Shown: piece by piece, positions 1,809-34,541 of the stretch | How the letters are laid out: the number at the start of each line of letters is the position of its first letter | Position numbering within the stretch: the stretch's first letter is position 1 | Virus record (IMG/VR): IMGVR_UViG_3300009093_000035 | Coordinates: 124,001-188,000 of that record | Strand: one strand, 5' to 3' | DNA: 64,000 nucleotides | The notes under the pieces: generated by a model | Seen by the model: only the letters and a program-made list of their open reading frames with translations | What the model was told of the DNA's origin: nothing | Database searches by the model: none | Position numbers and translations under genes: made by a program

Positions 1809-2447
1809 TCACTCCACCACGATCACGACGGAAAGATCGCGGACGACGGGGACCGCCCCGTACACCGCGAGCTTCGGCTTCACCTTCTTCAGGAGGGCGC
1901 TGAAATACGCCTCGTGGACTCTCTGGTCGAGGTGGCTGACCTTCTTCTTGTAGGCCCAATCGGTGTACGGGAAAGTGAGGTCGAACCAGTACTGAGCCTG
2001 ACCATCCTCGACCTTGAAGGACGAGTAGGAGGACCTCTTCGGGAGGATCGAGAGAGCCTCCCGAACGATGCGCTTGTCTTCCTCGGGACCGGCCGCGACG
2101 CGACCGAGAGCCTTCTCTCGCCGCTCTTGGGCTTGCTGGGGAGTGAGACCGATCGCCTTCGCTGCCTGACGGATCGCCTCTGACCAGGTCTTCCCGTAGT
2201 AGCCTTCGACCCCGAGCCCGCCCGCCGAACTGGCGCGAGTGACTCCGCGTCGAGACTTCCAGATCGAAGCTGTCCACTCCGGTCCGAGGAGGATCTTCAC
2301 GAGCTTGTCGACGGTTCGAGCCGACTGGCGATCGAGGATCGCCTCTTCGGCCTCAGCAGCAGCCTTCGCCAACAACGGCAGAAGATGCTCCCGAAGCTCG
2401 GGCTTCTCGTGGGCGAGTCGGATCGTGGCTGAGCGGAGGGATGCCAT
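1809..2447 (-). CDS. Hypothetical protein with an N-terminal LRSATIRLAHEKPELR tag; putative head cargo
   Basis: 212 aa, SD-like AGGGAG before the ATG, preceded by CGGT-N7-CTAT. Confidence 0.8.
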   Translation of the reverse strand: MASLRSATIRLAHEKPELREHLLPLLAKAAAEAEEAILDRQSARTVDKLVKILLGPEWTASIWKSRRGVTRASSAGGLGVEGYYGKTWSEAIRQAAKAIGLTPQQAQERREKALGRVAAGPEEDKRIVREALSILPKRSSYSSFKVEDGQAQYWFDLTFPYTDWAYKKKVSHLDQRVHEAYFSALLKKVKPKLAVYGAVPVVRDLSVVIVVE

Positions 2448-5042: not shown

Positions 5043-5474
5043 TTACTCTTCGGAGGTCGTGTGGAGGGCGTACCCGTCCGACACGTGGTCGAACAGTCGC
5101 TTGTTGTAGTCGTAGAAGCTGTTGGAAGGGTCGAGGAGATCCTTCCACTCGATCCACTTCACCGAGAGACCCGCTTCCTTCGAGAACGGCTCCCCCTCGA
5201 ACTCCGCGAGGTAGGTGATGGAGTCGTAGGTGACCTCGCCGGGACAGAGTCCGCGGAAGATCTTGCGGAGAGTTGTCACAACGACCCCCGTCTCCTCTTG
5301 GACCTCTCGGACGATGGCGTCCTCCGGACTTTCGCCCGTCTCCACCTTCCCGCCCGGGAGACCCATGTCCTCGGGCTTTCCTCGACGGGACACCCCGAGG
5401 ATGAAGCCGTCCTCACGAACGAGGAGGGCGCAGACTGCGAGCGGAACAGCGGGGAGGATCTGGTGGGTGGTCAT
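5043..5474 (-). CDS. Nudix hydrolase
   Basis: Nudix box GGKVETGESPEDAIVREVQEETG. Likely start is MTTHQ at 5474 rather than 5636. Confidence 0.9.
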   Translation of the reverse strand: MTTHQILPAVPLAVCALLVREDGFILGVSRRGKPEDMGLPGGKVETGESPEDAIVREVQEETGVVVTTLRKIFRGLCPGEVTYDSITYLAEFEGEPFSKEAGLSVKWIEWKDLLDPSNSFYDYNKRLFDHVSDGYALHTTSEE

Positions 5475-7448: not shown

Positions 7449-9173
7449 TCAGTAGCCGATCGCAGCGCGACGATTCGTGAAGAACGTCGACTGACCCGAG
7501 GTCGTGAGGTGGAGCCCGTCCCCGGCGAGATCACCGGTCGAGTACATCGACGCCCCGCTGATGATGGTGACGTTGACTCTCCCCACGGAGGCCACGGCGT
7601 TCGTCTGAGCCGTCACGAACTGAGCGAAGGTCTGGCCCAACCCGTTCGTCGAGATGTCCGTACGGGGACCGAGGGTCTGTACGAAGACGTGGGTGAAGTA
7701 GGGCGCGACGAGCGTCAGAAGCTGGGTGAGGGCTGTCTGGTAGTCGGAGACGAGAGCCCACTGAGAGAGGCCGAAGTCATTCGTTCAGATCTGGATCAGA
7801 AGCTCGTTCGTCACGGTCCCATCCGCGAGCGCGATCAACGCGTTCGCCATGGCGGTAACGGACGGGTATCGGATCGTGCTCAGCGTCTTCAGCGAGTAGA
7901 TACCCGCCGTCATCTCAGTCGTACGACCCGGGTAGGCATCGCGCGTGAGCATCGAAACGCCGTCGTTCTGGAAGAAGGCGGGGCTCGGGGATGCGTTCTG
8001 GCCGAGGTTGATCGAGTCGCCGATCTCGATGAGACGACGCGTCGGGGTACCCGGAGGCGCGAAGGTCATCGTGCGAGTCGGAGGAAGCCAGATCTGGGAA
8101 AGGTAGTTGCCCGCGTTCGGCGAAGGCGCTCGGTAGCTCTGGGGGCCGACTTCCAACTCGACCGTCTTCACAGTCCCGCCGGTTCCGAGTGAGATCAGGG
8201 GGTAGGCGATCGTCCCCACGTCCACGACGTTCTTCGATCCGCCGTTGATGCGGTAGGCGATCGTGTACTGGATCGTCGTGGTGACTGCGACGGTGAGAAG
8301 CTGGAACTCCTCGGCGTCGGTCGTGAAGAGAAGACGTGCGTACGAAGACGGGGCCTCGTACAGACCGGGGACCACGGTAGTCGGCTCCGTATCCACGTAG
8401 GGGACGCCGACGAGGAGCTGCTCGGTCGTACCGCTCGCCGCAGCGAGAAGCTGGGAGAGCTGAAGCTCGTCGGCGTCGCTCAGCTCCGCCGGGAACAGGA
8501 CGATGAACCGAACGGTCATCGCCGCGAAGGTTCCGGCCGAAGCGTTCACGCCTCCGAGAGCTACCGGCGTCGAGGGAACCACCAACCCGGCGACGCTCGT
8601 AGAGCCCCCGAGAAGGGACCCGAAGAGATCCGTTCCGTTCAGACGCTGGGGACGTACTGCGTTCACCCCGTTCGCGAACGTGCAGCGAGCGCTGTAGATA
8701 CCCCAGCCATCGCTGTACTTCGCGCTCTGGTACTCGTTGATGTTCGGACCGGTCTTCACCGCGATTGCGCCGACGTGAAGGCTGTTGCGGCAGTAGAGAC
8801 CGATGTAGTCGGTCGTACTACCCGCGTTCACCATGTACGACTCGATACCGCCGCCGGTCGCCTTCCCGACCATCACCATCGTGTAGCCGGCCGCGCTCGC
8901 GAAGAACCCGGTGGACCCCAACATCTTGTTGGCCACCCCGTCGAAGACCATGTTCGACCCGACGAGAGTCGGTCGAGCCGTCGTCCCGGTTCCTGCGGTG
9001 AACGCGGATCCTCCGGTACGAGGCGTCCACGACGTACACCTCTGGCCGGTCTCGAAGACCGTGCCGAACAAGGAGTCGAGTAGGATTCCGGACCGCGCCG
9101 AAACGAAGGCCGTGAGAGGGCCAATCGTGTTCTGAGCGGCCCTACCCGCGGCGAGGCCAGGACGGAACGCCAT
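7449..9173 (-). pseudogene. Lectin-like beta-sandwich plus SGNH/GDSL esterase, interrupted by one in-frame TGA at 7785-7787 (nonsense allele or readthrough)
   Basis: Block I IGDSI, block III IQI*TND and block V DGLH are all in one frame. The frame stays open for 111 codons after the TGA, to the stop at 7449. Confidence 0.75.
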
Positions 9174-9176
9174 CGT

Positions 9177-9617
9177 TCAGCTCACTGGCGTGACGAGGAC
9201 GATCTTGTTCGGGACGTCGATTCGAACGAGCCACGACCCCGCGGCAGCGTTCGCGCTCCCGAAGAGCGTGTAGTCGGAGTTGAGACCACCTGGGGTCGTC
9301 CAACCGGCCGAACCGCCTGAAGTGACGTCGATCGTGATCCCGAAAGCGGCGGTGTTCGTCTTCATAACCGTGAAGGCCATCGAAGACGGAGCCACTCTCG
9401 CGTCGATCTTCCGAGTCGCCGTCGGGGTGAACTGGACGATCGGCTCGTTTGCGTTGAAGATCGCGAGAGCCGAGTAGTCCGCGTCATGAGCCGCAGGCGG
9501 GTTCGCAATCGAAGTCGCGTTCGCCGCGACGTCCGAAGTCCCGAGAGCGCCGATCGCGTCCCGAGCGCTCTGCTGAGTAGCTCCGATAGCCTGGAAGAGT
9601 TTTCGGGGGGATGCCAT
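9177..9617 (-). CDS. Putative virion accessory protein with N-terminal PRKLFQAIGATQQSARDAI module
   Basis: Ala/Thr/Gly-rich and beta-rich; N-terminus shared with 11586..13046; late motif upstream. Confidence 0.7.
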   Translation of the reverse strand: MASPRKLFQAIGATQQSARDAIGALGTSDVAANATSIANPPAAHDADYSALAIFNANEPIVQFTPTATRKIDARVAPSSMAFTVMKTNTAAFGITIDVTSGGSAGWTTPGGLNSDYTLFGSANAAAGSWLVRIDVPNKIVLVTPVS

Positions 9618-9634
9618 ACCCCCTACGGACCCTT

Positions 9635-9648
9635 ATAGGCTAGCCAAC
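9635..9648 (-). promoter_or_regulatory. Putative late promoter motif GTT-N7-CTAT
   Basis: 17 nt upstream of the ATG at 9617. Confidence 0.55.
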
Positions 9649-9651
9649 CTG

Positions 9652-9975
9652 TCAGAGATTGGGATCCGACTTCGTCCGCGCGCGAAGAAGACGCCGCGCC
9701 ATGTGACGAGACAAGGTGTCCCCGATCTGGGCCGTCTTGTCCCCGAACTTGTACGGGGGTGGGTGGCGCTCCATGTCCTGGACGATCTTCTCCATCGTCC
9801 CGAACGGAACCTCGTCTCTCAGGAGCTGCCAGATCAGGGAGGCGACCTGGTCCTCTACCTGCCTCATCGTGACGTTGGCGACTGCGATCGCCACATCTTT
9901 CGCTACTCGGGCCGCCACCGCAGCCCGGATACTTTTCGAACGGGCTTTCCTCGAACGAGTCTTCTTCATGGACAA
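9652..9975 (-). CDS. Hypothetical basic protein
   Basis: 107 aa in the minus-strand gene string. Confidence 0.55.
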   Translation of the reverse strand: MSMKKTRSRKARSKSIRAAVAARVAKDVAIAVANVTMRQVEDQVASLIWQLLRDEVPFGTMEKIVQDMERHPPPYKFGDKTAQIGDTLSRHMARRLLRARTKSDPNL

Positions 9976-9977
9976 CC

Positions 9978-10400
9978 CTACCTCGCGGAAAGAGCTTCCT
10001 GGTAGAGCATCTCGCCCTCCCAGACCTTCGTCTGATTCCGGTTCCAGGAGACGTCGCCCGTCTCTCCGACGCGGAAGACACAGGCCCAGCAGTTCCGGTT
10101 GTTCTTGTCGAAGATGTAACCAGGAGCCTCGACCGCCGAAGCGTGTAGCTCCTGATGGAACTTACCCTCCCAGGTCTTCTCCGCAGGAGCCTTCGAAGCC
10201 CCGAGAAGGAAGCGGTTGTTGAGACCGATGATCCGGGGAAAGTCCCGATCGGCCGTCAGGACTTCGGCTTTCCCGGTGTTCGGATCTACCCAGCGAGCGG
10301 CGCACAAACCGCACTCGCACCGGGTCCACCGTTCCAGGAGCCCGCGGATGTCTCCGCAGCGAGTGCAGTAGAGGAGCTTCAAGGATCTCCCTCTCGCCAC
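9978..10400 (-). CDS. Hypothetical Cys-motif protein
   Basis: CTRC...CECG; 140 aa. Confidence 0.65.
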   Translation of the reverse strand: MARGRSLKLLYCTRCGDIRGLLERWTRCECGLCAARWVDPNTGKAEVLTADRDFPRIIGLNNRFLLGASKAPAEKTWEGKFHQELHASAVEAPGYIFDKNNRNCWACVFRVGETGDVSWNRNQTKVWEGEMLYQEALSAR

Positions 10401-10723
10401 TCCGCCTTCACCCCGGCCTGGAACGAACTCCCCTGAATGTTGAGGTTCGTATGGAGAGGCAGGACGATAGAATCGGTGAAGAAGTAGGTCCCAGGAGCGA
10501 GTTGGACCGTGTCTCCGGAACGAGTGGCCTTCAGAGCCCCGTTCAAGGTACGGAAAGGCCTCTTCAGAGACCCTCGACGACCGGTCGAGTCATCCCCACG
10601 CGGGTCGGCCCAACACGTCTGAGGCCTACGGAGGTAGACCCATAGAGCGTAGAAGGTGTAGAAGACCCCAGCCAGACAGAGCGAGAGAGCGATGAGAAGT
10701 CCGCTCATCGCAGCTGGGACCAA
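10379..10723 (-). CDS. Membrane-anchored protein carrying a beta-helix N-cap motif (DUF1565-like)
   Basis: N-terminal TM helix, then GDDSTG..GSLKRPFRTLNGALKA..GDTVQLAPGTY. Confidence 0.6.
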   Translation of the reverse strand: MVPAAMSGLLIALSLCLAGVFYTFYALWVYLRRPQTCWADPRGDDSTGRRGSLKRPFRTLNGALKATRSGDTVQLAPGTYFFTDSIVLPLHTNLNIQGSSFQAGVKAEWREGDP

Positions 10724-10962
10724 CCGCGAAGGTTGACTCCCCTAGACCAACCCGGAGTCGGGTAGAGACGCGGACGCCCCATGACTCCCTGACGCTTCGA
10801 AGGCGGATTCATCGGGATCACCGGTCCGTGGGCGTTCACCGGCGTCGACCCGCAAGAGCGGCAGGTCGGGGTCGGGGGATAGATCCCATACCAGACCTCC
10901 GGAACGCAGACCTGACCGCCGCAGTTCCCGCACGTGCCTCTCAGATGTACGCCCATGACCAA
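10705..10962 (-). CDS. Small zinc-finger protein
   Basis: CGNC...CRSC. Confidence 0.55.
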   Translation of the reverse strand: MVMGVHLRGTCGNCGGQVCVPEVWYGIYPPTPTCRSCGSTPVNAHGPVIPMNPPSKRQGVMGRPRLYPTPGWSRGVNLRGWSQLR

Positions 10963-11010
10963 CTCGCTTTCTCGGGCCTAGCCCTACCTCGACTTTACGC
11001 CCGAGCACGA

Positions 11011-11280
11011 CTACTCGTCGATCCTCAAGGGGACCTTCGCCGAGACAATCGTCCCCAGAGGCCAGTGCTTCGGGTTCAATCTCAGAGCCTCCCCCGGCTC
11101 GAACCCGGCCTCCTCCTCCAAGTCCCCAGCGGCGCCCTCCCAGCGGCGCTCGCCGGTATCCTCGTCCTCGACGAGAGTGAACTCCCCACCGTTCTCGTAG
11201 GAGACCTTCTTGGGTCCCATCAGATACGGTGCTCCAGGAACTTCACCCTGATCTCCAGCTTCGCTGAACAGTCGGGGCAC
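11011..11280 (-). CDS. Hypothetical acidic protein (start uncertain, possibly near 11220)
   Basis: Minus-strand gene string. Confidence 0.45.
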   Translation of the reverse strand: MPRLFSEAGDQGEVPGAPYLMGPKKVSYENGGEFTLVEDEDTGERRWEGAAGDLEEEAGFEPGEALRLNPKHWPLGTIVSAKVPLRIDE

Positions 11281-11504
11281 GAGACGGTCGCATGAGTGGG
11301 GTCGATCTCGAAAGCCTTCTTCGGCTCGTCGCTCTTCAGGTCAGTCACGTCGATCAAGGACTCAACGCGAACCTTCTTCTGAAAGAAGTTGTGTTCGCCG
11401 TCGAACCAAGCGACGTGGGCGGTACGACAGTCCACTTCCTCGACCGTCATCACGGGTCCGCCGCTCTTCAACTGAACCTGATTGCCAGAAGTGATTTCGC
11501 TCAT
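11220..11504 (-). CDS. YodC/DUF2158-like protein
   Basis: GNQVQLKSGGPVMTV...AWFDG signature; start MSEIT at 11504 with GGAGG SD. Confidence 0.8.
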   Translation of the reverse strand: MSEITSGNQVQLKSGGPVMTVEEVDCRTAHVAWFDGEHNFFQKKVRVESLIDVTDLKSDEPKKAFEIDPTHATVSCPDCSAKLEIRVKFLEHRI

Positions 11505-11554
11505 GAGGAACCTCCGGCGGGACTCTACCTTCCGCCCATCGTAGAAAATCGCCT

Positions 11555-11569
11555 CGCTTGAGTGATTAT
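11555..11569 (+). promoter_or_regulatory. Putative late promoter motif CGCT-N7-TTAT
   Basis: 16 nt upstream of the ATG at 11586. Confidence 0.55.
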
Positions 11570-11585
11570 AGAGTCTCCGAAGGAT

Positions 11586-13046
11586 ATGGTGCCCCCTCGA
11601 AAACTCTTTCAAGCTATCGGCGCCACCCAGCAGAGCGCGCGAGACGCGATCGCCGCCATCGCGGCCTCCGACGTCGGTGGAAGCGCTCCTGGTCCCTGGG
11701 CCTCGGTCCTTTACGTCGACCAGGTTCGAGGAAACAACACCACCGCTCAGCGAGGGAACGAGAATTTCCCGTTCGCGACGATTCAGGCAGCACTCAACGC
11801 GATGCAAACCGACGACACGGTCATGCTCGCACCCCAGCTCTTCACGATCACCGCAACGCTCACGGTGCCGGCGACGGTCGTGCGCGGCAGTATCTGCGGA
11901 GTCGGGCCATCCGGCGATTACGGCAACCCAGCAACGAGCGGTCCACTGACTAAGCTCGTATCTACTACGACCGATCTTTGGAACTTCGGCGCGAATCTCG
12001 GCTTGACACAATGGGTCATGTCAAACTTCTCGATGCGCACAACCCTCGCGGGCTCTTCGTGCATCCTCGCCGACGGATCGTCATACGCAAAGGCGACGTT
12101 CTTCGGTGCCGGCGGCGGCCTGACCTTGCGGAGCATGGTGCTCCGCAGCGCCAACGGCGCAAACGTGATGAACGTGAAGTATGCCGTCGGCGTCCAGCTC
12201 TTCGACGTTTGGAACACGGGCGGGAACTACTTGTTCACTACCGGAGCGGCGGTGACACTCGACCAGTTCCGCGGGACAGGAACGACAGTCACCACGACCA
12301 ACGACTCGTCTGACCCGCTAGCGATAAGCAACCAATACGCACTACAGATCCAGAACGGTACTCACATCGGCACGAGCGCATTCGGCACTGGTGTCGTCAT
12401 CGGCGGACAGACGAGCCTCAATCAGGACGAGACCTCGATCATCGGTGTTCTGAGTGGCTCTTCACTCTCCGTAGTCGGCTCGGGCAAGCCCGCTTGTGTC
12501 TGCGACGGTTGGATCGGCTCGATCGACTTCGCGAGCGCGGGCAAGGAGATCCCCGACACCGCGCTAGTGCTCTCGTTCATCTTCCAGGGCGCGCGCCTTT
12601 ACCAGAACGGTTTCACCACCATTACACCTGGCGTGTTCAAGGCGAAGGTTGGTGGTTCGGCCGTGAACTTCCAGTCAATGAATATTGACTCTACGACCAC
12701 AGTGCCTGGCGCTACAATCACGGCGGACGCAGCGATTCACATCACAGGACGCGGCGCTCGCTGGCCGAACGTCACGCTCGCGACGCCCGGTACAACGGGC
12801 GACATCATCCCGCCGATCCTCGCTGGCGTGATCGACCTCTCGGCTGGCGGTGCCGTGGCGAAGACGTGGGTTCAGCTCGGTATCCCCGGGCTGATCCGTG
12901 TCGGCGCCGCTCCAAACGAAGCGTTCCTCACGCCGAACATCCGCGGGGCTGACGCCGCAATCACCGTGAAGTCAACCACTGGACTCACTTTCGATTCGGC
13001 AGCGGTCGCGAACAACGCCTGCAACTGGCAGGCCATCTGGAACTGA
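11586..13046 (+). CDS. Beta-helix (pectate-lyase-fold) spike/depolymerase-like protein
   Basis: YVDQVRGN..PFATIQAALNA..DTVMLAP beta-helix cap; G/T/S-rich body; AAGGA SD before the ATG at 11586. Confidence 0.75.
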   Translation: MVPPRKLFQAIGATQQSARDAIAAIAASDVGGSAPGPWASVLYVDQVRGNNTTAQRGNENFPFATIQAALNAMQTDDTVMLAPQLFTITATLTVPATVVRGSICGVGPSGDYGNPATSGPLTKLVSTTTDLWNFGANLGLTQWVMSNFSMRTTLAGSSCILADGSSYAKATFFGAGGGLTLRSMVLRSANGANVMNVKYAVGVQLFDVWNTGGNYLFTTGAAVTLDQFRGTGTTVTTTNDSSDPLAISNQYALQIQNGTHIGTSAFGTGVVIGGQTSLNQDETSIIGVLSGSSLSVVGSGKPACVCDGWIGSIDFASAGKEIPDTALVLSFIFQGARLYQNGFTTITPGVFKAKVGGSAVNFQSMNIDSTTTVPGATITADAAIHITGRGARWPNVTLATPGTTGDIIPPILAGVIDLSAGGAVAKTWVQLGIPGLIRVGAAPNEAFLTPNIRGADAAITVKSTTGLTFDSAAVANNACNWQAIWN

Positions 13047-16907: not shown

Positions 16908-17435
16908 TCACCGGGCCGCCGCCCGGAGACAATGCTCTACGAAGTCGGAAGGCGGGCGAACGGCGTGCTTCTCGATGTAGTGGGCGAAGCCCTCGGGCCA
17001 GACGTAGGAGTCGTCGGTGAGGTCGGCCGAACCGTTCCGTACGCCGCACATCCTACAGTCCGACCATCCTCGGTACTGAGAAGCCGTCTTCCCGCCCCGG
17101 ACGTAGCTGAGGACGATCTCCCGTTCCGAGGCGTCCCAAGTCGGGTCTACGCTCGTCTCTACGGCCGGAAGGTCCATCTCCCCCGAGCCCTCGTAGATCC
17201 CCCACGAGGCCGGTACGGGCTTCCAGAAGCCGACCTTCGGTAGGCTCGCGAGTCTCTCGTTCCGCGCTCGGATCTTCGCGATCTCCGCGTCGGCCGGGAG
17301 CGCGTACTGATCCAACCCCCCTCGGGTCATCCTGATCACGCTCGCTTGCCTACCCACCAGAAGCGGGAGGAGAAACGGACGAAGCTCGGGCTTCGAGTGA
17401 GCCAGCCGGATCGTCTTCGATCGGAGATCGGTCAT
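16908..17435 (-). CDS. Tagged protein (LRSKTIRLAHSKPELR) with C-terminal CxxC...WPEG..HY..H domain; putative head cargo
   Basis: N-terminal tag ending in RQAS; late motif upstream. Confidence 0.8.
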   Translation of the reverse strand: MTDLRSKTIRLAHSKPELRPFLLPLLVGRQASVIRMTRGGLDQYALPADAEIAKIRARNERLASLPKVGFWKPVPASWGIYEGSGEMDLPAVETSVDPTWDASEREIVLSYVRGGKTASQYRGWSDCRMCGVRNGSADLTDDSYVWPEGFAHYIEKHAVRPPSDFVEHCLRAAAR

Positions 17436-25737: not shown

Positions 25738-28700
25738 CTACCAATTCCACTCCAGGGACGAAGTCTTGTTGGAAGACCCCGTATCGATGTCCAAATCCAC
25801 CAAGTCCCCGATCGCATCCTGTACCTGGGACTCGTAAGGAGCCTTCTCTTCCGACTCGGACGAATCGCCCGGACCGGAGAAATCGGTGGGCTTCGACCTC
25901 GAAGGAGCCTTCTCCCGACGCATCTCGGTAAGAGGCTCTCTCTCGGAAGCCGCGTCTTCTACAGCTACGTTCGTGAGAAGCTCGGTGAAGACGTCGTGAG
26001 CGTTGCGGACGCGCTCCCGCTGAGACGCCTTCAATCCAGAGAAGGGCCAGACGTAGTCGGCCTCATCCTCAGAGTCTTCCCCGTCGTAGATCTTCCGCCA
26101 AGACGCCGCGAGCTTCCCGCTCGGGTCTACCGCCTCCAGCGCCTTCTCCATCTGCTCCGGTTGAAGCTTCCGGACCATGTCAGAGACGACTTCGGCAGAA
26201 GGCTCGGAACCGGGAACTCCCAACCCGGCCTCAATCATGTCGGAGACGTCTACACCGCTCTCCTTCAAAGACCGAAGCATCGTCCTCGTCCCCGTAGGAA
26301 TCGAAGACTCTGAGTCGTCGTCGCCCTCTAGGGCCGACGAAAGCTCCAAGGCTCGATGGTCGGCGGCGAGGTACCCCATCCGGTTCCGGAGCTGTTCCAG
26401 TTCCTTCTGGTCCGCCTCGCGCTCTTCGGGAGACTGGGGCGCTCCGCTGTTGGAGGAGAGCTTCTCTTCGAGGTCCGAGATCTTGTCCTGAGTATCCGTT
26501 CGAACCCGGGCGAAGGTCTTCTTCGTCTCAGCCCGATCGTCCGGAGACATCCCATCGAACCGCTCGACCGTCTTCGAGGTTCGCTCCTTCACCCCGGCCT
26601 TATCGATCGGAGACGAGGTGTCTCCGATGTAGGTCATCGGGTTACGGGCTGCCTCAGCCGTAGCCGCATGAACGAAGAACTTCGAGAAGCTCGACTGGAG
26701 TTCCTTCTCCACCTGGTCGCGCTTCTCGGTGAGCTGGAGGATCCGATCACCTTGGGTCTTCGCGAAGCTCCGCTTCAACCCCTCGATCTCGTCGTTGAGG
26801 TCTTCGTACTTCGACTTCAGCTTCTCGATCTTCTCTGGGGACGGGGGCTTCTTCGTCGAAGGGGAGTTCCCCGCGGCCATCCTACCGATCGCTTCGTCGC
26901 GATCTGCCGTCAGCTTCTCTACGAACTTCTCGGCGTCCTCGGTCGTCATCTGCTCGGTCAGAGAATCGAGCGTCGACTTCACGAAACGTGAGTCCTCCTT
27001 CGAGAAAGCCGGGGAGTCCTTCACGGACTGGGCCTTCTGATGGATCTCCGAGCGGCGGCGCTTATCCAGCTCCTCCGCCTCGTCCCTCTTGTACTGAGCC
27101 TCTTCCTCAGCGTCCGCGTCCTCTTGCTGCTTCTTCGGGTCGGGAGGCGCCTCCCCGGACTCAGGCTTCGGTTCTGGCTTTGGGGGCTTCGGAGGAAGGC
27201 CCTTCAGATCTCTCTTCCGGGCCTCTTCCTGCTCGCGCTTCTTCTTCCGAAGCTTGTCTTCCTTCGAGCCCTCTTCTTCGAACTCCTTCGCCTTCTCGGC
27301 CCACTCGGCGCGGATCCGCTTCTGTTCCTCGTCCGGGAGACTCTGGAACTTCACGTCTTTGTTGGTCTCTTTGTTGTGGAAGGTCTTCCCCTCCACGGAC
27401 TCCAGGAATTCGTCATCCTCTTCTGAGTCCAAGGCCAACAAGTACCGAGAGGCCACGCGACTCGGGGCCGTCATGAAGTAGGCCATCGCTACTCGAAGGG
27501 CGACCTTCTTGTAGTTCAGGGAGAGATCGTCGTCGGTGGCGTCGAGGTCCTTGTCCCCCGAGTCCACCCGGTGGTTCTGGAGATCTTTCCGAGGGGGCTT
27601 CTTCTTCGGCTCCGGCTTCAGAAGAGCTTCCGTCGCCTCGTCTTCCTTCTCTGCTTCGGTCTTCGTGGCGGACTTCGACTCCTTGAAGGAAGAGAGGATC
27701 GTCCCATCCTTCATGAAGGCGTCTTCGAGACCGGGGACCAGGTAGTCCGAACGAAGGGTCGCCTTCTCGTGGCCGACGATGTCCGCGACCTCTTCGAGGG
27801 CGTCCGCGAACTCCTTCTTCAGGATCTTGTCCCGCTCCTTCCGAGCGCGTGGGAGATCCGGGCCCTCTTTCCGCTGTTCGCGGAGGGCCTTGCACATCTC
27901 CTGATTCGCTCGGAGCCCGCGGATGTCCTTCGCGGTGATGTCGAACTCGCTGAGGTAGTCGTTCACCGCCTCCGGCTTCACCGTGTAGTCGTCCCGGCTG
28001 AGCAGGCAATCGTCGCCCTTCTTCCCCTCAGCCAGCTCCTTCAGGAGCTTCACGACCGGAGCCGACTCGACCACCTTCTCGTGCTTCACGCCGGACTTTC
28101 CGACGTACTTCAGGGTCGCTTTCGACCCAGAGAACGAGATGTGCTTCTTACGCCACCCCGTCACCCCGTAGTGGCCTTCTTCGGCCGACCCCTCATTCCC
28201 TACCCGCTCGCACGTCTCGTCCATCAGAGCGGCGGCGAGGGCGGGGAGAGCTACCTTCGGGTCCTTCGAAGAGATGTCCTTCTTGATCATCTTCCGAAGG
28301 TCGCTGAGGTCCTTCCGAAGACGTTCGATCCGTTCGGCCTTCTCCGAGTGCCGGTTCGCTACCTGGCGATCGCTGTACTCGTAGTGGACATTCCCCTCGT
28401 CGTCCTTCGTCTTGGACTTGTACCGAGCCGCTACGACAACGGCCGAGGCCAGTCTCGCGGAAAGGGGCGGGGGACAATCGACGTCATGACGAGCGACCGT
28501 AACCAGGTGGGGGACGCAAGACCTACCGTTCGACTCGATCCAGTCGGCGAACGTGCGTAGGTGGCCCAGGCGGTCTTCCCAGATCGCCACGCCTCGGATC
28601 GAAGGCTGCTTCGAGAGGATCTTCTTGATCGTCTCCAGCTTGAATCTCTCGGTATCCGTGTCTCCGGGGGACAGGTAGATCTCCTGGAAGTCGAGACCGG

Positions 28701-31949: not shown

Positions 31950-33793
31950 CGAATCGGCCTTCCCCTACCCAAAGACACTCCGCGAGGAACCATCCGAGAT
32001 TCGACGCTTCCGCTTCTCAGGAGTCTCCGACGAGAGAGCCCTACGTTAGAGCCGAACCCTGACGAACTACCGAGAGGGAGCCCGGTTCGGGTGAGATGGG
32101 GTTGTTTCAGGAGGCGATTCGAGGCGAGCCACACCATTCGGACGAGAGCGTCCGACATGTCGTCGTGCTTCCCTTCGATGTTTGGGGCTTCGACTGTAGT
32201 GATGTACTTCGAGTGATACCGGGCCTGGAGTTCGAGAAGCTCCTTGATGTAGGCGCAGTGCTCTTCGTGGGCTTCCTTCGGCCAGTCGTAGAGACCTAGC
32301 CGGTTGTCCCACAACATCGACTTGAAGTTCTGGAAGATCTGGGACGTCAACGGCTTCGTCATGACGACCGACTTCAGCTGGGTGAGACCCCGCTTCTTCA
32401 GCGCCTGTTCGAAGGGGATACCAGTCCACTGGTCGAAGATCCCGTCGATCACATAGAACTTGTTACACCACTCCTTCACCCAATCGGCTACGTCGTCGAA
32501 GTCGAGGCGATCCACATCCTCGTACTTCCCTTCACCAGCCTTGATCTGATCGACCATATCGACCAAGATCTTCCCCTTCTCATCGATGTGGCCGAGCGAG
32601 ATCGCCGTCGCGTCTCCCTTGAGCGCCAAGTCGATTCCCATGAAGTAGGGACGACGGGGCATCCCTCGAACCTGGGGTCGGAGAACAGGGTTGATACACT
32701 TCGTGAGGTCGGTCTTGTCTTCGATCCAACCGCGAGTACGGTCCGTGAACTCGCCGCCGTACTCCGTGAAGAAGACCGTGGAGTCCTTCAAGTAGTGCTT
32801 CTCGAACTCCGTCGCCGGAATCGTCGGGTTCACTTCCCAGGTCGGAGCCTGGATACAGAGCATGGTGTCGGAGACCGAGCCTCCGCCCATACCCATCTGG
32901 AAGAGCTTGTAGAACAAGCCCTGACGACCCAAAGGGGACGAGATCAGGATCACGCGGGCTTCGACCGACCCGATAGAGACTCGCGAGTTCGTCGGATCCT
33001 TCGGCGAGAAAGCCGAGGTCGAGGGGACGACGGCGTTGTAGACGGCGTCGGCCGAGGATTGGCCAGCGTCGGTGAAGTGGGCCACCTCGTCGAGGATGAC
33101 AACGATGTTACCGGAACCACGAAGACCCTTCGCGATACAGGACCGGAAGGTGACTCGGATCGAGGCCTTCGCGTTCTTGTTCTCTGAGTAGGGGCCGTAC
33201 TTCTCAACGTCCTTCGGCGACTGGAATCGCGCGTAAGACATCGTGTTGTTCGCCATGTACGGCATGAAGAAGTCGCAGTTACGGAAGTGGCCGGAGACCT
33301 CCTGGTAGAGGATGCCCGCCTGGTCCTTGTCCGTAGCGACCGAGATCAGCTGGATAGCGTTCGAGGGAGGGAGACCGTAGTAGGCCTGGGGGTCACCCTT
33401 CGAAATCAGCTTGTAGGTCTCGTAGGCAGCGATACAGGCCGAGATCGTGGTCTTACCGGAGCGGCGGCCGATCGAAAGGATCATCTCCCGCCGGTCGTGG
33501 CCAGCGGTCACCTCTTTGATCGAGGAGCGACCCTCTTTGAAGAGGTACTCCAGGTACTCCTTCTCCGTGAACTCCAGGAACTTCTGACGGCGCCAGTCGG
33601 AGATCTTGAACTTGACCTTGTCGTCTAGCTCGATCCCGTAATGGGCCTTCAGGATGACCTTTTGGACCGGGAAGAGCTTCATGTTGAGCCCCCAGGGCTC
33701 TTCGATGAACTCGATCGGTCCTACGACCTGTTTCTTCTTGGTAATCGAGGAAACGGCACGAGCGCCCGCGAGGGCTATGTTTCCCAGACTCAA
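31946..33793 (-). CDS. terL: Terminase large subunit
   Basis: Q motif PVQ, Walker A GRRSGKT, Walker B VVILDE, ISSP coupling motif, nuclease GIDLA and HDDMSDA. Confidence 0.95.
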   Translation of the reverse strand: MSLGNIALAGARAVSSITKKKQVVGPIEFIEEPWGLNMKLFPVQKVILKAHYGIELDDKVKFKISDWRRQKFLEFTEKEYLEYLFKEGRSSIKEVTAGHDRREMILSIGRRSGKTTISACIAAYETYKLISKGDPQAYYGLPPSNAIQLISVATDKDQAGILYQEVSGHFRNCDFFMPYMANNTMSYARFQSPKDVEKYGPYSENKNAKASIRVTFRSCIAKGLRGSGNIVVILDEVAHFTDAGQSSADAVYNAVVPSTSAFSPKDPTNSRVSIGSVEARVILISSPLGRQGLFYKLFQMGMGGGSVSDTMLCIQAPTWEVNPTIPATEFEKHYLKDSTVFFTEYGGEFTDRTRGWIEDKTDLTKCINPVLRPQVRGMPRRPYFMGIDLALKGDATAISLGHIDEKGKILVDMVDQIKAGEGKYEDVDRLDFDDVADWVKEWCNKFYVIDGIFDQWTGIPFEQALKKRGLTQLKSVVMTKPLTSQIFQNFKSMLWDNRLGLYDWPKEAHEEHCAYIKELLELQARYHSKYITTVEAPNIEGKHDDMSDALVRMVWLASNRLLKQPHLTRTGLPLGSSSGFGSNVGLSRRRLLRSGSVESRMVPRGVSLGRGRPIR

Positions 33794-33797
33794 GAGA

Positions 33798-34541
33798 TCA
33801 CTCCTTCGTCATCCGCGACTTCGCTTCGGTCTTCCACTCTTCGTCGAGACTGTTCGCGAACTTCGCGAAGGTGCTCTCCTTCAGCTCCTCTCGGACCCCA
33901 GCCAGGTCCATCGCTTTCGCGAAGGTCTCGCCGATGAACTGGAAGAGAGACTTGAAGGCGGGGCTCTCCAGGTCAACGGCCTGGTTCTGGATCTGTTCCT
34001 TCCGCTTGATCCAGGTATCTCCGATCGCCTTCAGCGCGGCCACCCGGCGCATCGAGAGAGTCGACGTCTCTTCCCCCTGACGCTCGGCCTCCATCCGCTC
34101 GAAACGCAGCGAGGCGGCCTCCTCGGCAATCCCTAGCACAACCTGGTTGAGGACGTCCGGGGACTCCGGGGTCGTCTCGGCGGTGAGGACGATCGGATCG
34201 CTACGGAGCGAGGCTTCCTTGATACGAATCAGGTCCCCGGCGCGCTCCGTAGTCGGGGCGAGCGTCTCGTGGAGAGAGCCGATCGCCTTCGGGCGACCGA
34301 TCGGATGTTCCATCCACTGGGGCTGACCGTTCGACTTGAGGTCGAGGGTATCCGTAGGCTTCACCCCATTCGGGACTTCGCGCCAGCGGACCTTCCCCTT
34401 CTCGTCGATCACCTTCACCCGGAGCATCCCGGGCGGGATCGCGAACCCCTTCACGAGGCGAGACACCTCCGGAACCTTCTCGACAACTACGTTGAGAACT
34501 TCGTCGATGATGTCGGGGGTGTTGTTGTCTTGGGCGCCCAT
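33798..34541 (-). CDS. Candidate terminase small subunit
   Basis: Directly upstream of terL; helical; GRPK motif. Mostly a positional call. Confidence 0.5.
   Translation of the reverse strand: MGAQDNNTPDIIDEVLNVVVEKVPEVSRLVKGFAIPPGMLRVKVIDEKGKVRWREVPNGVKPTDTLDLKSNGQPQWMEHPIGRPKAIGSLHETLAPTTERAGDLIRIKEASLRSDPIVLTAETTPESPDVLNQVVLGIAEEAASLRFERMEAERQGEETSTLSMRRVAALKAIGDTWIKRKEQIQNQAVDLESPAFKSLFQFIGETFAKAMDLAGVREELKESTFAKFANSLDEEWKTEAKSRMTKE

What the first reader, a model, noticed from the sequence alone, without database searches (positions are those of the whole stretch)
9536..11675. Second shared N-terminal module (PRKLFQAIGATQQSARDAI..SDV) on two divergent late genes
Seen: 9617 (-) MASPRKLFQAIGATQQSARDAIGALGTSDV and 11586 (+) MVPPRKLFQAIGATQQSARDAIAAIAASDV share 19 consecutive identical residues despite many synonymous differences, then diverge completely (small beta protein versus long beta-helix). 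Both have the late motif upstream. Inference: an external virion-attachment anchor that lets different receptor-binding or depolymerase heads plug into the same site, an outside counterpart to the head tag.
Basis: partly seen in the sequence, partly recalled or inferred. Interest (0 to 1): 0.62.

Follow-up and report, generated by a model that had tools for sequence, protein, structure and literature searches.

The report
Shared docking peptide on phage tailspikes
A rhizosphere jumbo phage puts the same ~30-residue N-terminal peptide on at least six otherwise unrelated tail-fibre or tailspike-like proteins, most likely as a common plug that fixes interchangeable host-recognition heads to the virion; this design is known from other phages, but this peptide family is new.

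Summary
P0004 (window 9177-9617, minus strand, 146 aa) and P0005 (11586-13046, plus strand, 486 aa) share 19 identical residues (positions 4-22). These 19 codons carry 8 synonymous and 0 non-synonymous differences. No similarity follows the module.

The module is on six genes of this 248.6-kb phage contig, not two. A 32-residue profile finds only 16 proteins among 1.84 billion representatives. Fourteen carry it at residue 1, on at least eight different bodies.

P0005 from residue ~37 is a right-handed beta-helix with a C-terminal domain like the Sf6 tailspike (Z 24-26; pLDDT 86). It is predicted to form a homotrimer (0.89 against 0.00 for controls). The trimer interface starts at residue ~30, so the module is left free.

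Twenty-two homologues keep the P0005 body from the same GPW junction, but have other N-termini or almost none. A P0004-body homologue in a 320-kb relative also has a different N-terminus. The exchange therefore runs both ways, as expected for an attachment or docking module on receptor-binding proteins.

Docking itself, the partner, virion association and the "late motif" are not shown. This is a new sequence family of a known kind.

The parts
9528..9617 (-). N-terminal module of P0004 (codons 1-30): M-A-S, then the 19-residue core, then G-A-L-G-T-S-D-V
   Evidence: dS/dN
9177..9527 (-). Body of P0004 (residues 31-146), a small beta-rich domain. It is homologous to residues ~35-140 of the 562-aa module protein P0014, and to the C-terminal part of a 154-aa protein in L029 that has a different N-terminus.
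11586..11675 (+). N-terminal module of P0005 (codons 1-30)
11676..13046 (+). Linker and GPW junction, right-handed beta-helix and C-terminal beta domain of P0005 (tailspike-like body). The predicted homotrimer interface starts at residue ~30.
7449..9173 (-). Gene directly downstream of P0004; its ATG overlaps the P0004 stop. It is a 574-codon SGNH/GDSL-type esterase-like protein without the module, interrupted here by an in-frame TGA at 7785-7787. It may be cargo for P0004 acting as an adaptor (inferred).
11566..11574 (+). TTATAGAGT element 12-20 nt upstream of the P0005 start codon. It contains TAGAGT, a hexamer enriched upstream of genes. Promoter function and timing are not shown.
9631..9639 (-). 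CCTATAAGG element 14-22 nt upstream of the P0004 start codon. Function not shown.

Best explanation
The ~30-residue N-terminus has the consensus M-x-x-P-R-[KRP]-[LI]-[FY]-x-A-[IV]-G-A-T-x-x-S-A-R-x-x-I-x-A-[ILV]-G. It is a lineage-specific, exchangeable attachment (docking) module on the receptor-binding proteins of a group of rhizosphere jumbo or megaphages.

Each protein is a trimer. The catalytic or binding body begins right after the module; in P0005 that point is the GPW junction at about residue 35. Three copies of the short helical peptide project from the N-terminal end of the trimer. I infer that they plug into a common site on the virion or on another fibre protein.

Because the plug is kept constant, heads can be swapped, duplicated and scattered over the genome and still be mounted. 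The heads seen are beta-helix depolymerase-like bodies, K1-lyase_C-type bodies, fibre tips and small beta domains.

The two small module proteins (P0004, P0001) may be adaptors that bring in the module-less SGNH esterases encoded just downstream. This is a weaker inference, about 0.35.

Shown: the shared module under purifying selection, exchange in both directions, the tailspike fold, and the predicted trimer with the module outside its interface. Inferred: docking, the partner, virion location and the adaptor role.
For: 1. Purifying selection. The window pair has 0 non-synonymous and 8 synonymous differences over 19 codons. The pattern is similar among four of the six copies.

2. One module, many bodies.
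- There are six genes on the contig: 146, 156, 479, 486, 557 and 431 aa.
- The profile search of 1.84e9 representatives gives 16 hits. Fourteen have the module at residue 1, on proteins of 77-1067 aa.
- The module genes sit in tandem in relatives: five in L027, three in L028.

3. One body, many modules.
- Of the 25 other proteins found with full-length P0005, 22 share its body from the GPW-SVLYVD junction on. They carry at least four other recurrent N-terminal sequences, or almost none.
- In L026 three adjacent genes share yet another N-module on different bodies.
- In L029 a homologue of the P0004 body has a different N-terminus.

4. The bodies are RBP-like.
- The P0005 model has pLDDT 86.3.
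- The Foldseek top hits are phage tailspikes and fibres: Pam1, 7-7-1, Sf6 and LKA1.
- VIA gives Z 24-26.5 to RbmB lyase, AlgE epimerases and the Sf6 tailspike, the last with 383 aligned residues over model 28-486.
- Module proteins or their close kin match PHROG tail and tail-fibre families, K1-lyase_C and DUF1565.
- Atlas leads point the same way.

5. Trimer. Residues 1-330 in three copies score 0.89 against 0.00 for the best control. In the calibration the mark was reached by 20 of 30 solved pairs and by 1 of 23 single chains. Runs agree in at least 90% of contacts, and partner pLDDT is at least 83. Confident contacts run from residue 30 onward. Of the module only residues 18, 22 and 27 appear. 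The module has low pLDDT in the monomer model.

6. Precedent. Short conserved N-terminal peptides dock secondary RBPs onto branching domains (PMC6872550), and this has been validated experimentally (PMC13352976).

7. Adaptor idea.
- A P0004-type small gene lies directly upstream of SGNH genes in this phage and in L029.
- P0014 joins a P0004-like unit to a domain homologous to the start of the SGNH protein downstream of P0001 (28% identity, E 2e-7).
Against: - No binding partner is known. No Baseplate_J or T4 gp9/10-like domain was found in the contig, but it is about 56% complete.
- The four dispersed copies, including both window genes, lie among non-structural genes, not in a tail module.
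- There are no proteomic or expression data.
- The core GATQxxARxAIGA also occurs as internal tandem repeats in tail-fibre proteins of unrelated phages (P0021, P0022). It could therefore be a general fibre building block rather than a specific plug.
- If six or more proteins use one site they must compete, unless that site is present in many copies. No such site was found in this partial contig.
- The small protein P0011 of a relative has no large gene downstream. This weakens the adaptor idea.
- The trimer model used my own shallow alignment. Only 4 of its 28 rows carry the module, so the low confidence there is weak evidence.
Confidence: 0.6

Rival explanations
1. The module is an intrinsic structural element of the fibre, with no specific docking role: an N-capped helix that nucleates or caps the trimer. 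It would be a lineage variant of a motif common in tail fibres. Attachment would be mediated elsewhere or by other proteins.
For: - The core GATQxxARxAIGA is repeated three or four times inside the PHROG tail-fibre proteins P0021 and P0022.
- Residues F8, I11, A18, I22 and L25 form a heptad-like stripe (read from the sequence).
- Module residues 18, 22 and 27 touch between copies in the trimer model.
Against: - Homologous beta-helix bodies are found without this module, some with almost no N-terminal extension (P0023, P0044).
- The confident trimer interface starts after the module.
- The PRKLFQAI half is always at the extreme N-terminus and is specific to this lineage.
- Strict conservation across unrelated bodies fits a shared external partner better.
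Confidence: 0.2
2. The module is a leader or recognition peptide that is removed or read during maturation. The reader could be the papain-like C39-type peptidase encoded at the end of the conserved RBP cassette, or the GroEL-like chaperonin encoded at its start.
For: - In this phage, L027 and L028 the order is conserved: Cpn60-like, a ~320-aa gene, the module-bearing genes, a C39-like peptidase, then a 696-780-aa gene.
- The peptidase keeps a Q...C motif typical of C39 (read from the sequence).
- Several modules end in GG or GA about 10 residues after the core.
Against: - GG is not conserved across the family.
- The hydrophobic positions do not fit the double-glycine leader register (alignment).
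- The four dispersed copies are 75-200 kb from the peptidase.
- The peptidase has a faint endolysin match, and papain-like peptidases next to fibre genes are often lysins (general knowledge).
- No transporter is present.
Confidence: 0.06
3. The module is an internal sorting tag, such as a capsid-targeting or propeptide sequence like those of T4 or phiKZ head proteins. The proteins would then be packaged inside the virion, not displayed on it.
For: The genome does carry another N-terminal tag-like family on at least ten genes. This shows that N-terminal tagging is used in this phage.
Against: The bodies are trimeric tailspike-like beta-helices and tail-fibre-like domains. These are external adsorption devices in every studied case (general knowledge).
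Confidence: 0.03
4. The module is a leftover of recent duplication or gene conversion, or a nucleotide-level element such as a shared leader or regulatory sequence, with no protein-level role.
For: P0002 and P0005 also share about 30 nt upstream of the start codon.
Against: - Synonymous sites are close to saturated (dS 0.45-1.3) while amino acids are identical.
- The upstream regions of P0004, P0001 and P0003 are unrelated.
- The module is conserved in several other phages.
Confidence: 0.02

Closest known systems
Conserved N-terminal docking peptides of secondary receptor-binding proteins in branched RBP systems (KP32, KP34, K1-5, K1E, SP6, Menlow and PhiK64-1 groups; Latka et al. 2019, PMC6872550; validated in PMC13352976)
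   Same: - A short conserved N-terminal sequence sits in front of a trimeric beta-helix depolymerase-type body.
- Bodies are exchanged while the peptide is kept.
- One phage carries several RBPs.
   Different: - There is no sequence relation.
- The peptide is about 30 residues and helical by prediction.
- The same peptide is on at least six proteins of one genome, not one peptide per docking position.
- The genes are scattered over more than 200 kb.
- It is also on 146-156-aa mini-proteins.
- No T4gp10-like partner was found, though the contig is incomplete.
P22 and Sf6 tailspikes with an N-terminal particle-binding domain
   Same: The body fold and domain order of P0005 match Sf6 (beta-helix plus C-terminal domain; Z 24, 383 aligned residues). 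P0005 is predicted to form a homotrimer.
   Different: P22 and Sf6 use a folded head-binding domain of about 110 residues (general knowledge). Here there is only a ~30-residue peptide. Sequence identity is about 10%.
Phage G7C gp66 / gp63.1 (an SGNH esterase tailspike carried by another RBP), as described in PMC6872550
   Same: An SGNH-type esterase lacks its own virion anchor and is encoded next to a protein that has one.
   Different: Here the candidate carrier is a 146-aa protein, not a large RBP with a T4gp10-like domain. The interaction is not tested. The esterase gene carries a premature stop in this contig.
Internal repeat motif of tail-fibre proteins (P0021 and P0022; PHROG 31460, 13892, 1954, 5711)
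   Same: They share the core G-A-T-Q-x-x-A-R-x-A-I-G-A.
   Different: There the motif is internal and tandem. Here it is single, at residue 1, and preceded by the lineage-specific P-R-K-L-F-Q-A-I.

Membership tests
Phage tailspike (trimeric right-handed beta-helix RBP): P0005 | Right-handed parallel beta-helix body | tested here: met
   AF2 model has pLDDT 86.3. VIA gives Z 20-26.5 to beta-helix lyases, epimerases and the Sf6, CBA120 and Det7 tailspikes. Foldseek top hits are tailspikes.
Phage tailspike (trimeric right-handed beta-helix RBP): P0005 | Homotrimer | tested here: met
   Prediction only. The score is 0.89 against 0.00 for the best control. The mark was reached by 20 of 30 solved pairs and by 1 of 23 single chains. 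Runs agree in at least 90% of contacts, and pLDDT is at least 83. A pass may reflect likeness to solved tailspikes.
Phage tailspike (trimeric right-handed beta-helix RBP): P0005 | Presence in the virion and enzymatic or receptor-binding activity | not testable with these tools
   The phage is uncultivated and known only from metagenomes. Only DNA runs were found.
Phage tailspike (trimeric right-handed beta-helix RBP): P0005 | Encoded within or next to tail or baseplate genes | tested here: inconclusive
   The window copies lie among small non-structural genes. P0003 and the sixth copy lie in a conserved multi-RBP cassette. In a relative, P0014 lies 2 kb from a Baseplate_J gene.
Conserved N-terminal docking peptide of branched RBP systems (PMC6872550) | Short N-terminal sequence conserved across RBPs whose bodies differ | tested here: met
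Conserved N-terminal docking peptide of branched RBP systems (PMC6872550) | A partner RBP or adaptor with a T4gp10-like branching domain in the same genome | tested here: inconclusive
   PF07880 and PF04865 were not found in the contig. The contig is about 56% complete and the proteins are very divergent.
Conserved N-terminal docking peptide of branched RBP systems (PMC6872550) | Removing the peptide abolishes incorporation into the virion | not testable with these tools
   This needs genetics or biochemistry.
Double-glycine leader peptides cleaved by C39 peptidases | GG, GA or GS at positions -2/-1, with hydrophobic residues at -4, -7 and -12 | tested here: not met
   GG or GA after the module is present in some members only, and the hydrophobic register is shifted (alignment; sequences).
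Double-glycine leader peptides cleaved by C39 peptidases | Cognate C39 peptidase encoded nearby | tested here: inconclusive
   A C39-like gene follows the home cassette in three phages. It is 75-200 kb from the four dispersed copies, and it has a faint endolysin match.
Any curated protein family (Pfam-A, PHROGs) covering the module | A significant profile match over residues 1-30 | tested here: not met
   None of the five proteins has a Pfam or PHROG match over the module. No PDB chain matches the profile.

The most novel reading that the evidence does not exclude
One docking peptide serves as a universal plug for six or more different heads. These include mini-adaptors (P0004, P0001) that recruit module-less SGNH esterases. 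All would compete for one multivalent site, so a single megaphage genome would produce particles with mixed, combinatorial sets of depolymerases and fibres, a built-in way to hedge host range. The plug itself would have been recruited from an internal tail-fibre repeat.
Probability: 0.2. Interest if true: 0.6.

Novelty: new member of a known kind. Interest (0 to 1): 0.4.

Why it matters
- It gives a sequence handle, a 30-residue profile, for finding the host-recognition proteins of a group of uncultivated soil and rhizosphere jumbo phages. Their proteins otherwise match almost nothing.
- It marks the exact junction (the GPW at about residue 35 of P0005) where heads are exchanged.
- It shows that such phages can scatter receptor-binding genes far from the structural module.
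- If the peptide-partner pair were identified, it would be a compact natural docking system and a way to work out which polysaccharides these phages attack.
- The principle itself, a conserved N-terminal anchor with swappable heads, is already well established.

Tried and rejected
- **Pfam, PHROGs and PDB on the module.** Pfam and PHROGs gave nothing on the module in the five proteins first found. The PDB profile search gave nothing relevant.
- **tblastn and blastn against 50,697 phage records.** No match.
- **Single-sequence AF2 of P0004.** Unusable, pLDDT 35. Its fold remains a lead only.
- **IMG/VR and metagenome scans with the module.** Apart from this phage and its twin contig, they found one relative phage (on two records) and two short contigs with near-copies of P0005.
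- **BLASTP of the 462-aa ORF against the 623-aa neighbour of P0001, and against P0014.** Not significant.
- **PDB sequence searches for the 462-aa ORF and for P0003.** Nothing.
- **Search for a 'late' promoter.**
  - A clear GTGTA(A/G)A ... CGTTCGTTAC motif exists but is not upstream of the module genes.
  - TAGAGT is enriched upstream of genes and precedes P0005.
  - I could not assign timing to either motif.
- **RNA runs.** None hold the region.
- **Stop-codon recoding for the in-frame TGA in the esterase gene.** Rejected. The twin contig has GGA at that codon, and this is the only difference in 6,096 nt. It is therefore a nonsense SNP or a sequencing error, and I name no alternative code.
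- **Searching the 320-kb relative's record for the module.** Not possible; the record is not held.
- **Complex job.** The single complex job went to the P0005 trimer. The P0004-esterase pair and any peptide-partner pair remain untested.


Full report
**Setting.** The window is bases 124001-188000 of a single 248,579-bp contig.
- It is an IMG/VR virus record that CheckV rates about 56% complete.
- It is identical to the rhizosphere metagenome contig Ga0105240_10000045. A near-identical twin, Ga0207695_10000111, is offset by 35 kb.
- It is 61% G+C, and about 87% of genes lie on the minus strand.
- It encodes a portal and a large terminase inside the window, and a GroEL-like protein outside it (its counterparts in relatives carry Cpn60_TCP1). 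It is therefore a piece of a jumbo or megaphage.
- Real genes show GC3 above GC1. Many long antisense 'shadow' ORFs show the reverse. All module-bearing genes have the real-gene pattern.

**The observation.**
- P0004 (window 9177-9617, minus strand, 146 aa) and P0005 (11586-13046, plus strand, 486 aa) begin with M-x-x followed by 19 identical residues. They match again at S-D-V (residues 28-30). After that they share nothing detectable.
- The 19 codons differ at 8 synonymous and 0 non-synonymous positions (pS 0.56, dS about 1).
- The copies are therefore old, and the peptide is held by selection on the protein. It is not a recent copy or a nucleotide-level element. The upstream regions of most copies are unrelated.

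- A six-frame search found five genes with the module. An HMM built from 23 module sequences found a sixth.

| Copy | Contig position | Strand | Length |
|---|---|---|---|
| P0001 | 8068-8538 | minus | 156 aa |
| P0002 | 33102-34541 | plus | 479 aa |
| P0004 | in the window | minus | 146 aa |
| P0005 | in the window | plus | 486 aa |
| P0003 | 210569-212242 | minus | 557 aa |
| sixth copy | 212936-214231 | minus | 431 aa |

- P0003 carries a variant module. The sixth copy carries a degenerate one.
- P0002 is a full-length paralogue of P0005 (44% identity). The other bodies are unrelated to one another.

**Distribution.**
- A 32-residue profile searched against 1.84 billion representative proteins gave 16 hits at E <= 1e-3. 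Fourteen have the module at residue 1, on proteins of 77-1067 aa.
- Their bodies include a DUF1565 beta-helix (P0017), a K1-lyase_C domain (P0018), PHROG 'tail protein' domains (P0014) and several unknown ones.
- Three hits lie on one relative phage, known from a 223-kb JGI contig and a 473-kb ENA contig. They are again dispersed, and one lies 2 kb from a Baseplate_J gene. A fourth, small copy turned up on the same phage.
- In two further contigs the module genes sit in tandem, five in L027 and three in L028. They lie in a conserved slot: Cpn60-like gene, a ~320-aa gene, the module genes, a C39-like peptidase, then a 696-780-aa gene. P0003 and the sixth copy occupy this same slot here.
- The last two profile hits (P0021, P0022) are PHROG tail-fibre proteins of unrelated phages. 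They carry the core G-A-T-Q-x-x-A-R-x-A-I-G-A as internal tandem repeats.
- No Pfam, PHROG or PDB entry covers the module.

**What the bodies are.**
- With a 28-sequence alignment, AlphaFold2 gives P0005 a mean pLDDT of 86.3. Residues 40-486 are confident and residues 1-36 are not.
- Foldseek ranks phage tailspikes and fibres first: Pam1, Agrobacterium phage 7-7-1, Sf6 and LKA1.
- VIA-align gives Z 24-26.5 to the RbmB polysaccharide lyase, the AlgE epimerases and the Sf6 tailspike. The Sf6 alignment covers 383 residues, from model residue 28 to 486.
- A three-copy fold of residues 1-330 scored 0.89, against 0.00 for the best of three controls.
  - In the tool's calibration the mark was reached by 20 of 30 solved pairs and by 1 of 23 single chains.
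  - Runs agree in at least 90% of contacts, and partner pLDDT is at least 83.
  - My own alignment and three copies differ from the calibration set-up, and a pass may reflect likeness to solved tailspikes.
  - Confident contacts begin at residue 30 and run along the helix. Of the module only residues 18, 22 and 27 appear.
- The sixth copy matches a tail-fibre PHROG.
- Atlas feature look-alikes of P0004 include phage tail-fibre C-terminal domains and Mtd_N. These are leads only.

**Exchange in both directions.**
- The full-length search with P0005 found 25 other proteins (40-84% identity). Three carry the module. The other 22 match about 77-99% of P0005.
- All 22 line up from the junction G-P-W-(A/S)-S-V-L-Y-V-D onward.
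- Upstream of it they carry at least four other recurrent N-terminal sequences: an ~85-residue type, an ~65-residue type, helical types and a short proline-rich type. Some have almost nothing there.
- In L026, three adjacent genes share the ~65-residue type on three different bodies, one of them small. The same design therefore recurs in another phage with another plug.
- In L029, on a 320-kb relative, a 154-aa protein has the P0004 body behind a different N-terminus.
- So the module goes with many bodies, and each window body goes with other modules. The break falls exactly where the trimeric body starts.

**Mechanism.**
- The best reading is an N-terminal docking module. Three short, probably helical peptides per trimer project from the N-terminal cap of the body.
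  - The monomer model gives helices at residues 5-10 and 16-29, with an invariant Gly12 between them.
  - F8, I11, A18, I22 and L25 form a heptad-like stripe (read from the sequence).
- I infer that the peptides bind a common site on the tail or on another fibre. This matches the conserved N-terminal peptides that dock secondary RBPs in Klebsiella, E. coli and Salmonella phages (PMC6872550), now shown experimentally to be required for incorporation (PMC13352976).
- The binding, the partner and the virion location are inferred.
- The main rival is that the peptide is a generic fibre helix with no specific partner. The internal-repeat relatives keep this alive. It is disfavoured because homologous bodies exist without the module.
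- A leader-peptide reading is suggested by the neighbouring C39-like peptidase. It fails the double-glycine consensus and does not explain the dispersed copies.

**Small proteins and esterases.**
- P0004 is followed, with an ATGA start-stop overlap, by a gene that the ORF listing shows as a 462-aa ORF.
- Its close homologues are 565-578 aa.
- In-frame reading shows that one TGA (window 7785-7787) interrupts a 574-codon gene with GDS, G-T-N-D and D-x-x-H blocks typical of SGNH hydrolases.
- The twin contig has GGA at that codon, and this is the only difference in 6,096 nt. This is therefore a nonsense SNP or an error, not recoding.
- P0001 is followed after 134 nt by a 623-aa protein with a GDSL_2 domain.
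- In L029 the P0004-body gene precedes two SGNH genes.
- In P0014 a P0004-like unit is fused to a domain homologous to the start of the 623-aa protein.
- This suggests that the mini-proteins act as adaptors for esterases that lack the plug, reminiscent of G7C gp66 and gp63.1. However, P0011 in a relative stands alone, and the pair was not tested.

**The 'late motif'.**
- I found TATA(A/G)(A/G)-like elements 13-24 nt upstream of three copies.
- TATAG is rare in the genome: 24 occurrences, against about 220 expected from base composition (my arithmetic). Two of the four start-proximal ones precede P0002 and P0005, but those two genes share their whole upstream region.
- TAGAGT is enriched upstream of genes (12 of 31 occurrences).
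- Nothing links these elements to late expression, and no RNA data exist.

**Verdict.**
It is unproven for attachment.
- This is a previously undescribed sequence family doing what conserved N-terminal RBP anchors are known to do. The unusual features are one peptide on six or more proteins, wide dispersal over the genome, and mini-proteins that carry the peptide.

Noticed in passing
window 7449-9173 (-), stop at 7785-7787: The gene downstream of P0004 is a 574-codon SGNH esterase-like gene. An in-frame TGA cuts it at the Gly of its G-T-N-D block. The twin contig from another sample has GGA there, the only difference in 6,096 nt.
   Followed up: yes
window 16908-17435 (-), window 1809-2447 (-); contig 83620, 100683, 101157, 101794, 110841, 188120, 205876: A second N-terminal tag-like family (L-R-x-x-x-I-R-L-A-H-S-K-P-E-L-R-x-x-L-L-P-L-L) sits on at least ten genes with unrelated bodies. 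The same motif occurs internally in an ORF of L013.
   Followed up: partly
contig 25766-26854, 26925-29624, 35168-36142 (all minus strand; outside the window): A third shared N-terminal sequence sits on three fibre-like genes near P0002. One of them matches tail-fibre PHROGs (E 1.6e-13). This suggests a second set of RBPs with its own attachment module.
   Followed up: partly
window 10379-10723 (-): A 114-aa ORF has a transmembrane-like start followed by the first ~60 residues of a DUF1565-type beta-helix cap (E 4.6e-6). It then stops. It may be the remnant of another beta-helix gene lying between the two module genes.
   Followed up: partly
whole contig, e.g. upstream of window 5043-5474 (-): A strong two-box motif, GTGTA(A/G)A, then ~15 nt, then CGTTCGTTAC, precedes many small genes. 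It is often found in divergent pairs and looks like an early or middle promoter. It is not found upstream of the module genes.
   Followed up: partly
contig 209629-210528 (-) and 215435-217003 (-); L027, L028: The multi-RBP cassette is flanked in three phages by a GroEL-like gene plus a ~320-aa gene on one side, and by a C39-like cysteine peptidase plus a 696-780-aa protein on the other. The roles of these neighbours are unknown.
   Followed up: partly
contig 212291-212926 (-); L025 11590-12201; L026 6665-7219: A conserved ~185-211-aa gene (shared W-W-A-x-A-L-x-x-R and R-A-H-Q motifs) directly follows beta-helix RBP genes in two unrelated contigs. Here it sits between the sixth copy and P0003. 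It could be an assembly factor.
   Followed up: no
whole contig: Many very long ORFs (up to about 1,800 codons) have GC1 of 0.8 or more and run antisense to the real genes. ORF length alone is misleading in this genome.
   Followed up: yes
L019 (Ga0105238_10266646) 990-1556: A 181-aa variant of the P0005/P0006 protein keeps the module, the first ~150 residues and the last ~25 residues, but lacks most of the beta-helix. It looks like an internal deletion allele in another sample.
   Followed up: no
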